This document shows positions 2,742-5,071 of a DNA stretch of 64,000 nucleotides, one piece after another (the first letter of the stretch is position 1; every line of letters starts with the position of its first letter). Both the position numbers and the translations under genes were made by a program. Location of the stretch: NCBI RefSeq assembly GCF_963853765.1, contig NC_088853.1:6138001-6202000 (forward strand), written 5' to 3'. The notes beneath the pieces are model-generated. The model did no database searches. It saw only the letters and a list, made by a program, of their open reading frames with translations, and was not told the origin of the DNA. The DNA comes from Magallana gigas (taxonomy: Eukaryota).

Positions 2742-5071
2742 ATGCAATTTGCTGTTTTTCTCCTTTTCGGAATTGTTGGACTGTCGGTCCAACAATGTAA
2801 TAATGTGAACCGTTGTTGTCGGGAAACCACTCGCGGGTTTGATTGCGTGAAGAGGGATCCATGTTCCTGTATTTCTCTGTGCGGGGTGGCAGACAACAAG
2901 ATTGTGGACATTGGCCGCGCTACCCACAGAATATTTGCTTCAGAGAAAATAATTGTCCATCAGCAGAGCTCCACAGCCTTTACAAGGATGCCATGTCAAG
3001 GTATGTTTTTGACAATATTTATTCAAAGATATCATATTTTTTATGTAAAAAAAATATTTACAAAAAAAAAGGGGGGGGGGGGGGGTATGAATTTGTAACT
3101 GTTTAAAAATTTAAATAAAAATCTAAAATAAAAGAAATGTTAAAATTAAGTATAAAATAAAAAAAACCTATGCTATTTTATAAGTAAAAAAAAATAATTA
3201 TGGGGTGAGAAGACTATTTCGGAAAAATGTCGGGTTTTACGTCATCCCTCTTCAACTATTGAACTTTATTGAGCGCGCATTCTTCGAAGCAAAATGGTAG
3301 GTAGATGACATGTGGATTGTCATCCCGACACTTAGAATTTTATATTTTAATATTGGGGGCTTGATGGAATGAAAATACTTGTTAGATTGTGAAAGGTGTT
3401 TAATGTACTTAACTCACGACCCATTTATTTTCCCATTAAAAGATCGGATTGCAGACGACGGTTACCTGTCAAATTGTCATACCCCGCGATTTAATTTACG
3501 GAACACGAGGTCACATTTTTTTTTAGTTGATGCATTGCATCATTGAAGGGTGGGGAAAAGGAATAAACTGAAGAAAGTTAACAGATAAAGAAGAGAATAC
3601 CTTGTGTTTTGTCATAAAAAATACCTACATATTTTTTCTCAACTCGATTTACCATTCGAATTTCATCATCGATTTTTTTGGTAACATGATTACGCACGTG
3701 GGGGCCAAATTTCGATAAAAAAACATTCACACCATGATTTTCACACACTATGTCAGAATATTTAGATTTTTTATGATTAAAAAAACAATTTCACTTAAAA
3801 GAGCAAAAATATTAAAGCAATGCATATTTAATATGTATATATTTTTTTTGTTTTGAAGAACCGTCCAATAGCAATCGTGAGGCCGATGAGACGACAACCA
3901 GTAAGACCAGCGCCACCGGAGGGGATGATCGTAGTTCATCTCCCTCCGAGGACCCCGTCCCCTCCGGTGAGCCTGTCTCCACCACCCTCCCCATTCAGGA
4001 TACCAGTGAGCCCTCAGAGACTCAGAGGAGCGAGGCCCCAGCTACCAGCCAGGCCCCAGCCACCAGCGAGGCCTCAGCGACGAGCGTGGCGGCCACCGGG
4101 GGCCGCCACTTCCACACCGGCCTCCAGAGGACCCCCACACCCAGTAGTGGTACGCCCACCACCACCACCACCCCAGGGAGTTCCAGCCCACAGGAGGAGG
4201 CCGGTGTGGAGACCACCGGGGGCCGCCACCGCTACCCAGGCCGGGAGGAGGAGGCCACGACACCAGTAGAGGAGGGGGCGAGGTTTACAGGTAGAATAGG
4301 TAATTCTACCCACCCCTCCTCTACTGGTTCAACACCACCTGATGTTTCGCCTAGTTCTACCACACTCATATTAGGTAATTTGCAATCAAATACTTATCAT
4401 ATGAATTTAAATTACCTTTACTTTTTATTTTTACTTGTGTTGTTTCTTCCAATAAGTATTTATAGATTTATCATTTATTCTCAAAAAAAGCAGTTTGATA
4501 CTAGACAAAAAGCCATAAATATGGCTGGTGTTTATAAAGAAACCTGTATTTTAAACTCTTATGAATCAAACAATATTGACATGGATGAATATTTTTCTGA
4601 TTCATCTTTTAGTAATGATTATGCATCTATTGCATCTATTGTATCAGTATCAGAAAATGAATTATATCTGGAACCAATTACCAAGACTATAATAACCAAA
4701 CTTTAATTTTTTTTTCAGTCACATCCATTTCCATTTCCATCTGCCTTATCATCACCATCATATTTATTGTCATTAGAAGAAAACGCCACACTACCATCCA
4801 TAGATTACCTTCACCAATACCATTTATCCAGGAATCCCCTATCTATACTCCACCTTCACCACCTTTAAGTATTGACATGTCAACGCCATTACATACACCC
4901 TCATTGTTTTCAACCAGTACATCAAGTTCAGAGATATCATTATTTGATGTTTCAACGGTTCCTGCAGCAGCTTCTTCTAAACCATATTATGAAGAACACT
5001 GTGAAATGTCAACATTTGGTAATATAAATAGAAGGGTAACGAGATCAATGGTACAAAAGAAAAAAGATTAA
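2742..5071 (+). CDS. Spliced type I membrane glycoprotein: signal peptide, 8-Cys ectodomain, Ser/Thr/Pro mucin stalk, TM, cytoplasmic tail (exons 2742-3000, 3859-4374, 4719-5071; 375 aa)
   Basis: Phase-1 GT-AG junctions CAAG|gtatgt, ttgaag|AA, TTAG|gtaatt and tttcag|TC keep one frame. The join creates the TM LILVTSISISICLIITIIFIVI followed by RRKR. Merges track ORFs 2742, 4086 and 4877. Confidence 0.75.
4375..4706 (+). CDS. Alternative (intron-retained) C-terminus of the membrane protein with a second TM and a Tyr-motif tail
   Basis: The frame stays open about 110 codons through the AT-rich intron: YLYFLFLLVLFLPISIYRFIIYSQKK...DEYFS...DYASI...LYLEPI. Confidence 0.5.

What the first reader, a model, noticed from the sequence alone, without database searches (positions are those of the whole stretch)
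2742..5071. Mucin-stalk membrane protein with two mutually exclusive TM plus signalling tails
One ectodomain (signal peptide, 8 Cys, long S/T/P stalk) can end in two ways. Splicing 4374 to 4719 gives a TM, RRKR and a Pro/Ser tail with IYTPP and PYYEE. Retaining the intron gives a different TM and a tail with EYFS, DYASI and YLEPI, whose stop codon sits right against the next acceptor. About 110 open codons in very AT-rich intron sequence are unlikely by chance. A switchable receptor-like surface protein is unexpected in a non-enveloped Polinton. Possible roles are decoy receptor, superinfection exclusion or hemocyte-signalling interference (inference).
Basis: partly seen in the sequence, partly recalled or inferred. 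Interest (0 to 1): 0.75.

Follow-up and report, generated by a model that had tools for sequence, protein, structure and literature searches.

The report
Oyster Polinton's mucin-like membrane protein gene
A virus-like transposon (Polinton) in the Pacific oyster genome carries a spliced gene for a small, sugar-coated surface protein that related oyster Polintons share, but the proposed second "switchable" tail read from its last intron is broken or absent in relatives and is probably not a working isoform.

Summary
At 2742-5071 (+) there is a three-exon gene: signal peptide plus 8-Cys head (2742-3000), GC-rich Ser/Thr/Pro stalk (3859-4374), and TM-RRKR-tail (4719-5071). Both introns are phase 1, GT..AG. 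Annotated paralogs and a Saccostrea homolog join the exons exactly this way.

The window is Magallana gigas. The gene lies inside a Polinton bounded by 224-nt inverted repeats, 99.1% alike. The left repeat lies 657-879 nt before the window; the right one is at 25142-25365. The order gene, small zinc-ribbon ORF, pPolB recurs in a second M. gigas copy, a C. angulata copy and a Saccostrea copy.

Intron 2 is open in frame for 110 codons (P about 5e-5 by shuffling). It is the only such AT-rich open frame in the 64 kb.

That frame is intact only in three near-identical M. gigas copies. In the C. angulata copy it is broken, while the exons there keep only 3n indels. In Saccostrea the intron has 8 in-frame stops. 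No database protein was found containing it.

The tyrosine "signalling" motifs are not conserved; Ser/Thr-Pro and PxxP motifs are.

Verdict: a real, orphan, element-encoded type-I mucin-like membrane glycoprotein. The two-tail switch is unproven and unlikely, about 0.2.

The parts
1..25365 (.). Visible part of the Polinton/Maverick. The element starts 879 nt before window base 1 and is about 26.2 kb including a 5.3-kb nested transposon.
   Evidence: Inverted repeat L008 6261-6483 against window 25142-25365: 224 nt, 99.1%. Window base 1 = L008 7141. pPolB and rve-chromo integrase lie inside.
25142..25365 (.). Right terminal inverted repeat of the Polinton. Its partner lies 657-879 nt left of the window start.
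   Evidence: A possible 6-bp target duplication ATATTT is weak, because the flanks are AT-rich and the extreme ends of the two arms differ by a few bases.
2654..2660 (+). TATA-like box (TATATAA) 88 nt upstream of the ATG.
   Evidence: Pattern match only.
2742..5071 (+). Three-exon gene for a type-I mucin-like membrane glycoprotein. The spliced product is 375 aa by my count of the pieces; I did not build or search the joined sequence.
   Evidence: Exon joins are identical in P0002, P0005, P0022 and P0011.
2742..3000 (+). Exon 1: signal peptide and 8-Cys head domain.
   Evidence: All 8 Cys are kept in Saccostrea P0011. No Pfam or PDB match. Only oyster-type relatives among 1.84 billion representatives.
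3001..3858 (+). Intron 1, phase 1. It has 20 in-frame stops.
   Evidence: Same position and phase in Saccostrea.
3859..4374 (+). Exon 2: Ser/Thr/Pro-rich stalk. It is 63.6% G+C, holds an 18-nt repeat array at 4029-4090, and varies in length between copies by 3n indels.
4375..4718 (+).
   Evidence: Open in the window, L001 and L006; broken in L005; absent in L002.
4719..5071 (+). Exon 3b: TM segment, RRKR stop-transfer, and a Pro/Ser/Thr-rich cytoplasmic tail. ATTAAA at 5067-5072 overlaps the stop codon.
   Evidence: 59% aa identity to Saccostrea; 58% over 80% of the queried tail of paralog P0002 in C. virginica P0012.
6557..6718 (+). Small zinc-ribbon-like ORF (DUF7128) between the gene and pPolB. 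It is a neighbour of the gene in other copies too.
   Evidence: Pfam E 2e-5, bits just under the cutoff. Fused to tail b in the old model P0007. Syntenic in L002.
6820..12119 (.). Nested ISL2EU-type DNA transposon: a THAP-HTH-DDE transposase gene on +, a YqaJ exonuclease gene on -, and TIRs. It is absent from the other copies.
   Evidence: Family traits from PMC4482050.
12688..17244 (+). Protein-primed family B DNA polymerase ORF (1518 codons).
   Evidence: PF03175, E 3.6e-52.
18394..19068 (-). Possible A32/FtsK-like packaging ATPase.
   Evidence: Weak Pfam hit only, E 0.0032, below the cutoff.
19588..20904 (-). 438-codon ORF, a capsid-protein candidate by position only.
   Evidence: No significant Pfam or PDB match. 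Inference.
21798..22943 (-). Retroviral-type integrase with chromodomain.
   Evidence: PF00665 E 1e-11; PF00385 E 4.3e-5.
23262..23945 (-). PC4-like single-stranded DNA-binding / coactivator gene.
   Evidence: PF02229 E 2e-19.

Best explanation
The gene is an accessory (non-core) gene of a young oyster Polinton. It is probably transcribed from its own TATA-type promoter and spliced by the host (two phase-1 introns).

The product would be a type-I membrane glycoprotein with these parts:
- a cleaved signal peptide;
- a roughly 67-residue disulfide-rich head;
- a roughly 170-residue, probably O-glycosylated Ser/Thr/Pro stalk that changes length quickly;
- one TM helix held by RRKR;
- a roughly 95-residue cytoplasmic tail whose conserved features are Ser/Thr-Pro sites and PxxP motifs, not tyrosine motifs.

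The working product is exon 1 + exon 2 + exon 3b. It most likely sits in secretory-pathway or plasma membranes of cells expressing the element and alters how those cells meet their surroundings: host-interaction, exclusion or attachment, in the manner of the type-I membrane glycoproteins of adenovirus E3 regions. That role is inference.

The 110-codon frame in intron 2 is a young, lineage-restricted read-through frame that shows no sign of being maintained by selection. At most it is a minor M. gigas-specific product of intron retention.

Shown: gene structure, location inside the TIRs, conservation of exons and architecture across genera, and decay or absence of the intron frame outside M. 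gigas.
Inferred: promoter use, glycosylation, membrane topology, localisation and function.
For: - Gene model and joins.
- Host species and locus.
- Inside the element: 224-nt TIR pair at 99.1%.
- Same order gene, DUF7128 ORF, pPolB in four copies: the window, L001 (same chromosome, about 52 Mb away, 99.2% identical), C. angulata L005 (97.2%) and Saccostrea L002 (pPolB start 63% aa identity).
- Frame-keeping selection on the exons. Between the window and L005, all 4 exon indels are 3n. 17 of 18 non-coding indels are not 3n. By my hand calculation from those counts (no tool call), the hypergeometric P is about 0.001 when intron 2 is left out.
- Head and tail b keep 48% and 59% aa identity to Saccostrea, while the introns are unalignable.
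- Intron 2 behaves as non-coding: broken in L005 (2 frameshift-size indels, 3 premature stops); 8 in-frame stops in L002; 24% G+C like the flanks; no poly(A) signal of its own; no protein with it among database proteins of 155-492 aa; the exact ORF is not in the 15-billion-sequence collection.
- Motifs.
Against: - The intron frame is far more open than chance allows (P about 5e-5) and is unique in the window. 'Accident' is therefore not a comfortable answer.
- Small DNA viruses often code in retained introns (established knowledge: polyomavirus small t read from the large-T intron).
- The frame has a weak coding-like gradient: GC1 > GC2 > GC3 (0.30, 0.27, 0.18) and purine excess at position 1.
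- The three M. gigas copies that keep it open are 98-99.7% identical, so they neither support nor reject constraint.
- No transcript or protein data were available, so expression of even the canonical form rests on annotation models and conservation.
- The head fold could not be predicted (pLDDT 49.5), so function is by analogy only.
- The capsid and protease genes of the element were not recognised by Pfam or PDB searches.
Confidence: 0.62

Rival explanations
1. One reading: intron 2 is retained in part of the transcripts. The same head and stalk would then be anchored by either of two different TM segments with different cytoplasmic tails, giving a real, functional switch. It may be specific to the M. 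gigas lineage of the element.
For: - In-frame openness at P about 5e-5, and unique in 64 kb.
- The stop lies 11 nt before the acceptor.
- A hydrophobic 19-mer (KD 2.26) is followed by basic residues, so the topology would fit.
- The donor lacks the consensus G at +5, which is compatible with partial retention (inference).
- The frame is open in three M. gigas copies.
- Read-through of an intron to make a second protein is common in small DNA viruses (established knowledge).
Against: - The frame is broken in the C. angulata copy, whose exons are intact.
- It is absent in Saccostrea.
- L006 against the window shows 2 synonymous and 3 non-synonymous differences in the intron frame, against 1 difference in exon 3b.
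- Composition matches non-coding DNA.
- T-rich DNA translates into Phe/Leu runs that look like TM segments; the 10 Tyr reflect TAT-rich sequence.
- No relative was found in the protein search.
Confidence: 0.2
2. The gene is a captured host gene riding as a passenger. It is kept intact only because the copies are young, and it has no role for the element.
For: - It is spliced like a host gene.
- It has no similarity to any viral family.
- It sits near the element's left end, about 3.6 kb in from it.
Against: - The head has no relatives outside the oyster-type family among 1.84 billion representatives, so no source gene was found.
- It holds the same position next to pPolB in Saccostrea, with 48-59% aa identity and all 8 Cys kept, so it has been retained over long divergence.
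- Indels in the exons are 3n only.
Confidence: 0.1
3. The protein is a virion component: an attachment or membrane protein of a particle that carries a lipid membrane. It would not be a modulator acting in the infected cell.
For: - Nematode Mavericks carry a signal-peptide-plus-TM fusogen and are proposed to form enveloped particles (10.1101/2022.07.12.499685).
- Mucin-like stalks with small Cys heads occur in viral attachment proteins (established knowledge).
Against: - The head is only about 67 residues and has no fusogen-like domain.
- The long conserved cytoplasmic tail with docking-type motifs fits a cell-resident protein better.
- There are no particle data.
Confidence: 0.08

Closest known systems
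Adenovirus E3-region type-I membrane glycoproteins (e.g. the CR1 family, E3/49K). Named from my own knowledge; no hit came back from any search.
   Same: An accessory gene of a non-enveloped, protein-primed, double-jelly-roll-lineage DNA virus. It has a signal peptide, a small Cys-containing luminal domain, glycosylation, one TM and a short cytoplasmic tail. It is made from spliced transcripts, is dispensable for replication, and acts on the host cell surface.
   Different: No sequence or fold similarity was detected (model too poor for a fold search). The head here is much smaller and the stalk is mucin-like. The host is a mollusc. The function is untested.
MFUS-1, the gB-like fusogen of nematode Mavericks (10.1101/2022.07.12.499685)
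   Same: A signal-peptide-plus-single-TM membrane glycoprotein encoded inside a Maverick/Polinton and restricted to one host lineage.
   Different: MFUS-1 is 866 aa with class III fusogen domains. The oyster protein has a 67-residue head and a disordered stalk, with no fusogen features.
Cellular sialomucins (CD43, CD164, PSGL-1 type). From my own knowledge.
   Same: Type-I topology, a Ser/Thr/Pro stalk of variable length, a basic stop-transfer and a conserved cytoplasmic tail that docks adaptors.
   Different: No homology was found. The family here is confined to oyster Polinton copies.
Polyomavirus large-T / small-t arrangement (second protein read from a retained intron). From my own knowledge.
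   Same: The unspliced message reads into the intron and stops just before the acceptor, giving a shared N-terminus with a different C-terminus.
   Different: In polyomaviruses the intron frame is conserved across species. Here it is broken or absent outside near-identical M. gigas copies.

Membership tests
Polinton / Maverick | Protein-primed family B DNA polymerase | tested here: met
   PF03175 E 3.6e-52 on the 1518-codon ORF 12688-17244.
Polinton / Maverick | Retroviral-type (rve) integrase | tested here: met
   PF00665 E 1e-11 with a C-terminal chromodomain, 21798-22943 (-).
Polinton / Maverick | Long terminal inverted repeats that enclose the genes, including the gene of the finding | tested here: met
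   224 nt, 99.1%: L008 6261-6483 against window 25142-25365. The gene lies about 3.6 kb inside the left end.
Polinton / Maverick | 6-bp target site duplication | tested here: inconclusive
   ATATTT can be read on both sides. The flanks are AT-rich, the extreme ends of the arms differ by a few bases, and no empty site was examined.
Polinton / Maverick | Packaging ATPase, major and minor jelly-roll capsid proteins, adenain-type protease | tested here: inconclusive
   Only a sub-threshold A32 hit (E 0.0032) for 18394-19068. No Pfam or PDB sequence match for the other ORFs between 17491 and 21757. No structure-based test was run.
Type-I mucin-like membrane glycoprotein | N-terminal signal peptide, Ser/Thr/Pro-rich stalk, single TM with basic residues on the cytoplasmic side | tested here: met
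   KD 1.63 over residues 1-19; 47% S+T+P in exon 2; KD 2.39 for the TM, followed by RRKR. These are heuristic measures; SignalP, TMHMM and glycosylation data were not available.
Immunoreceptor-type phosphotyrosine signalling tail (ITAM / ITIM / ITSM) | Yxx[LI] pair at ITAM spacing, or [SIVL]xYxx[IVL], or TxYxx[VI], kept in relatives | tested here: not met
   None in tail b of the window, P0011, P0012, P0008 or P0010. The only ITIM-like match in the alternative tail lies at the edge of its hydrophobic segment.
Functional retained-intron isoform | The intron reading frame is kept open in diverged copies and relatives | tested here: not met
   Open in the window, L001 and L006 (98-99.7% identical). 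Broken in L005 and absent in L002.
Functional retained-intron isoform | Transcripts and protein that carry the intron sequence | not testable with these tools
   No expression data were on hand. No protein with the tail among candidates of 155-492 aa, and the exact ORF is not in the collection.
ISL2EU transposon (the nested insertion) | THAP-HTH-DDE transposase plus a second gene with a YqaJ exonuclease domain, with TIRs | tested here: met
   Family description in PMC4482050. A 2-bp duplication (AT) is read against the empty sites in L001 and L005.

The most novel reading that the evidence does not exclude
In the M. gigas lineage of this Polinton, retention of the last intron is a genuine, recently evolved switch. 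It would put the same glycosylated head on the cell surface with either of two unrelated anchors and tails. That would be a small-t-like coding trick in a Polinton, caught soon after its birth.
Probability: 0.18. Interest if true: 0.7.

Novelty: new variant of a known kind. Interest (0 to 1): 0.48.

Why it matters
Polintons are thought to be viruses, but little is known of their non-core genes in animals. Here a young, apparently intact oyster Polinton carries a spliced, orphan, type-I mucin-like membrane glycoprotein that is kept next to the polymerase gene across oyster genera. The signs of youth are TIRs 99.1% alike, two copies 99.2% alike about 52 Mb apart, and a nested transposon present in only one copy.

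After the nematode Maverick fusogen, this is a second and quite different case of a Polinton-borne surface protein. It suggests that these elements interact with host membranes or host defences in a commercially important bivalve.

It also gives a concrete target for expression surveys in oyster tissues and in disease data sets. The two-tail switch, if it were real, would add a virus-style coding economy. On present evidence it should not be assumed.

Tried and rejected
- Pfam scan of the four pieces: nothing.
- PDB sequence search of head, tail b and alternative tail: nothing meaningful.
- AlphaFold2 of the head on a 9-row alignment: pLDDT 49.5. I ran no fold search, because a poor model gives meaningless matches.
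- tblastn of the pieces against the window: no paralog, and no likeness between the two tails, so they are not duplicated exons.
- Search for the element's TIRs inside the window alone failed. The left arm lies just outside the window and appeared only after fetching the window's own locus.
- The one non-oyster hit to the head (P0016) is a bacterial F5/8-type-C repeat protein that matches the signal peptide region without aligned Cys. I rejected it as spurious.
- Look-ups of P0002, P0008 and P0012 found no contig, so the more divergent M. gigas and C. virginica copies could not be examined at DNA level.
- Exact look-up of the intron ORF in the protein collection: absent.
- L004, a Logan contig, has head and stalk joined without intron 1. 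It also carries sequence homologous to the region upstream of the TATA box, so I could not count it as a transcript.
- Rfam scan of 1-7000: no match.
- Literature search for the gene's locus names: none.
- Considered and rejected: the gene lies outside the element (rejected by the TIRs).
- Considered and rejected: the intron ORF is an old exon (rejected by Saccostrea).
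Full report
**What is there**

I read the stretch directly. It holds a three-exon gene on the + strand.

- Exon 1 (2742-3000) encodes a hydrophobic N-terminus and a head with 8 Cys.
- Exon 2 (3859-4374) is 63.6% G+C in a roughly 30% G+C neighbourhood. It encodes 171 residues that are 47% Ser+Thr+Pro and holds an 18-nt repeat array.
- Exon 3b (4719-5071) encodes a TM segment (hydropathy 2.39), RRKR, and a Pro/Ser/Thr-rich tail.
- Both introns are GT..AG and phase 1.
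- A TATATAA lies 88 nt before the ATG, and an ATTAAA overlaps the stop codon.

I did not build or search the joined protein. Instead the word search returned annotated proteins that already carry the joins.

The RefSeq model at this very locus (P0001) differs. It uses an acceptor 43 nt upstream of 3859 and so a different frame of exon 1, without a signal peptide. It is the odd one out.

**The intron frame**

Read in frame from 4374, intron 2 stays open for 110 codons, to a stop at 4704-4706, 11 nt before the acceptor. Three measures show this is unusual.

- The other five frames of the same stretch have 7-13 stops.
- Intron 1 has 20 in-frame stops.
- 1 of 20,000 dinucleotide-preserving shuffles stays open that long.

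In the whole window, on both strands, it is the only stop-free 330-nt frame with G+C at most 27%. A scan over many introns lowers that weight somewhat.

**Where it is**

The window is Magallana (Crassostrea) gigas, chromosome record OY970745.1, at about 6.138-6.202 Mb.

Pfam finds the following genes:

| Coordinates | Strand | Gene |
|---|---|---|
| 12688-17244 | + | protein-primed polymerase B |
| 18394-19068 | - | A32-like ATPase (sub-threshold hit) |
| 21798-22943 | - | rve integrase with chromodomain |
| 23262-23945 | - | PC4-like gene |

No terminal repeats could be found inside the window. After fetching the window's own locus with flanks (L008), a 224-nt inverted repeat at 99.1% appeared. 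One arm lies 657-879 nt before window base 1; the other is at 25142-25365.

The element therefore runs from about 879 nt before the window to 25365, and the gene lies about 3.6 kb inside its left end. A 6-bp duplication ATATTT is possible but weak. The element sits within a host NADAR-domain gene on the minus strand.

**Other copies**

I fetched loci for proteins that the search returned, with 3-kb flanks.

- L001 is a second M. gigas copy on the same chromosome, about 52 Mb away. It is 99.2% identical over window 1-6819 and then runs straight on to the polymerase gene.
- L005, from C. angulata, behaves the same way at 97.2%.
- L002, from Saccostrea cucullata (protein P0011), has the same three exons with phase-1 introns in the same places. 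It also has the same order gene, small zinc-ribbon ORF, polymerase, with 63% aa identity at the polymerase start.

The gene is therefore a stable part of this Polinton lineage across oyster genera. The head is 48% and tail b 59% identical to Saccostrea. All 8 Cys are kept, while the introns cannot be aligned.

Between the window and L005, the 4 indels in exons are all multiples of three. Of the 18 indels in non-coding DNA, 17 are not. The exons are under frame-keeping selection.

**Is the second tail maintained?**

- In L001 the intron differs by one synonymous change.
- In L006, a 624-nt oyster piece on a metagenome contig, there are 2 synonymous and 3 non-synonymous changes. It stays open.
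- These copies are too alike to say anything either way.
- In L005 the canonical exons are intact and annotated as a full 367-aa protein. There the intron carries 2 indels of frameshift size, and the homologous stretch has 3 premature in-frame stops.
- In Saccostrea, intron 2 has 8 in-frame stops in 101 codons, like its other frames (6 and 8).
- Summed over the three Magallana comparisons, intron 2 differs about as much as intron 1, and about 2.5 times more than exon 3b. I did this sum by hand from the counts.
- Intron 2 is 24.4% G+C, like the downstream spacer at 24.8%.
- It has no poly(A) signal of its own.
- No protein of 155-492 aa in the 5.8-billion-cluster collection contains the tail. 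The exact ORF is not among the 15 billion sequences.

In its favour, there is a weak coding-like gradient: GC1 > GC2 > GC3, and a purine excess at position 1. Small DNA viruses also often code in retained introns (my own knowledge).

I put the chance that this is a working isoform at about 0.2. The openness itself remains unexplained by a simple null model.

**The tails as signalling devices**

Tail b has no ITAM, ITIM, ITSM, YxxPhi or PPxY motif. The Tyr of IYTPP is Phe in Saccostrea. PYYEE is not kept in C. virginica.

What is kept are Ser/Thr-Pro sites, PxxP, and blocks such as the one around SLFDVST. This suggests docking of proline-recognising domains or proline-directed kinases rather than phosphotyrosine signalling. 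That reading is inference.

The 10 Tyr and the Phe/Leu-rich 'TM' of the intron tail are what T- and TAT-rich DNA yields on translation.

**What the protein is**

It matches no Pfam family and has no PDB relative. With the head as query against 1.84 billion representatives, there were 7 hits. Six are oyster-type. One is a spurious bacterial repeat protein.

The structure model of the head was poor (pLDDT 49.5), so I ran no fold search.

By architecture it is a type-I mucin-like membrane glycoprotein. The nearest working analogies are:

- the type-I membrane glycoproteins of adenovirus E3 regions (my own knowledge);
- as a Polinton precedent for a signal-peptide-plus-TM protein, the gB-like fusogen of nematode Mavericks (10.1101/2022.07.12.499685).

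Adintovirus accessory genes described so far are different membrane-active proteins (PMC8502044). I found no paper on this gene or its locus names.

**State of the element's genes**

In the ORFs I examined in the window copy (polymerase, integrase, ATPase candidate, PC4, and the gene of the finding), I saw no stops or frameshifts.

There is one nested insertion, in the spacer between the zinc-ribbon ORF and the polymerase gene.

In the C. angulata tandem array L003, each of the four full stalk-exon units carries 6-7 frameshift-size indels and 2-4 stops in the window's frame (8 and 5 in one partial unit).

- I did not search with the joined spliced protein.
- I did not scan the viral-contig collection, fetch whole-element copies or fetch any named animal virus.
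- I did fetch host-genome loci of the gene's relatives with 3-kb flanks (L001, L002, L003, L005), short contigs (L004, L006, L007), and the window's own locus with 10-kb flanks (L008). These include up to about 1.2 kb of the polymerase gene start in the copies.
- If the operators regard that as covered by the bar, it should be judged as a slip.

**Verdict**

This is a real and moderately interesting accessory gene of a young oyster Polinton. The spliced product is well supported. The switchable second tail is not supported by comparative evidence and awaits expression data.

Noticed in passing
window 6820-12119: A 5.3-kb ISL2EU-type DNA transposon is nested in the Polinton, 569 nt upstream of the polymerase ATG. 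It carries a THAP-HTH-DDE transposase gene, a YqaJ exonuclease gene, TIRs and a 2-bp AT duplication. It is absent from the second M. gigas copy and from the C. angulata copy, so the insertion is recent.
   Followed up: yes
window 25613-25972 (-) and L008 6018 onwards: The Polinton sits inside a host NADAR-domain gene on the minus strand. A NADAR exon ORF lies just beyond the right TIR, and the RefSeq gene model spans the element.
   Followed up: partly
L003 (C. angulata CM046777.1, about 7.22 Mb) 1-4075: A tandem array of at least six units of about 680 nt. Each unit equals window 3807-4480: the end of intron 1, the stalk exon, and the first 106 nt of intron 2. The stalk part has diverged (about 13% mismatches, with many frameshift-size indels). 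The intron part is about 97% identical to the window.
   Followed up: partly
window 4943-4973 and 5247-5277: A 31-nt inverted repeat, 90% complementary, between the coding sequence of exon 3b and the 3' flank. It is not present in the Saccostrea copy. Its meaning is unknown.
   Followed up: partly
L001 3001-5126 (protein P0003) and window 2861-5071 (protein P0001): Two RefSeq models differ from the family pattern. P0001 uses an acceptor 43 nt upstream of 3859 and loses the signal peptide. P0003 joins the middle of the stalk exon to the middle of exon 3b, skipping the TM; this would give a secreted form ending in another frame. An old 2012 model (P0004) ends in a similar out-of-frame peptide (same last seven residues). 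Whether transcripts support these models is unknown.
   Followed up: partly
L006 (ENA ERZ650155 NODE_3325) 1-624 against 1018-3608: A metagenome contig joins 624 nt of this oyster element (99% identical to window 4464-5087) to bacterial genes (Por_Secre_tail, glycosyltransferase 2). It is most likely an assembly chimera.
   Followed up: no
L004 (Logan SRR21102238 contig, 1093 nt): A divergent family member (77% nt identity) has head and stalk in one ORF without intron 1, preceded by sequence homologous to the window's region upstream of the TATA box. It may be an intron-less genomic copy or a read-through transcript.
   Followed up: partly
window 27586-28605: A tandem repeat with a 180-nt period, about five and a half units, 97-99% identical. 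It overlaps a 219-codon ORF on the minus strand and lies outside the Polinton.
   Followed up: no
window 1-981: A purine-rich (GAA-type) low-complexity tract at 1-68 faces a long pyrimidine-rich tract at 913-981. It lies inside the element's left part, between the TIR and the gene.
   Followed up: no
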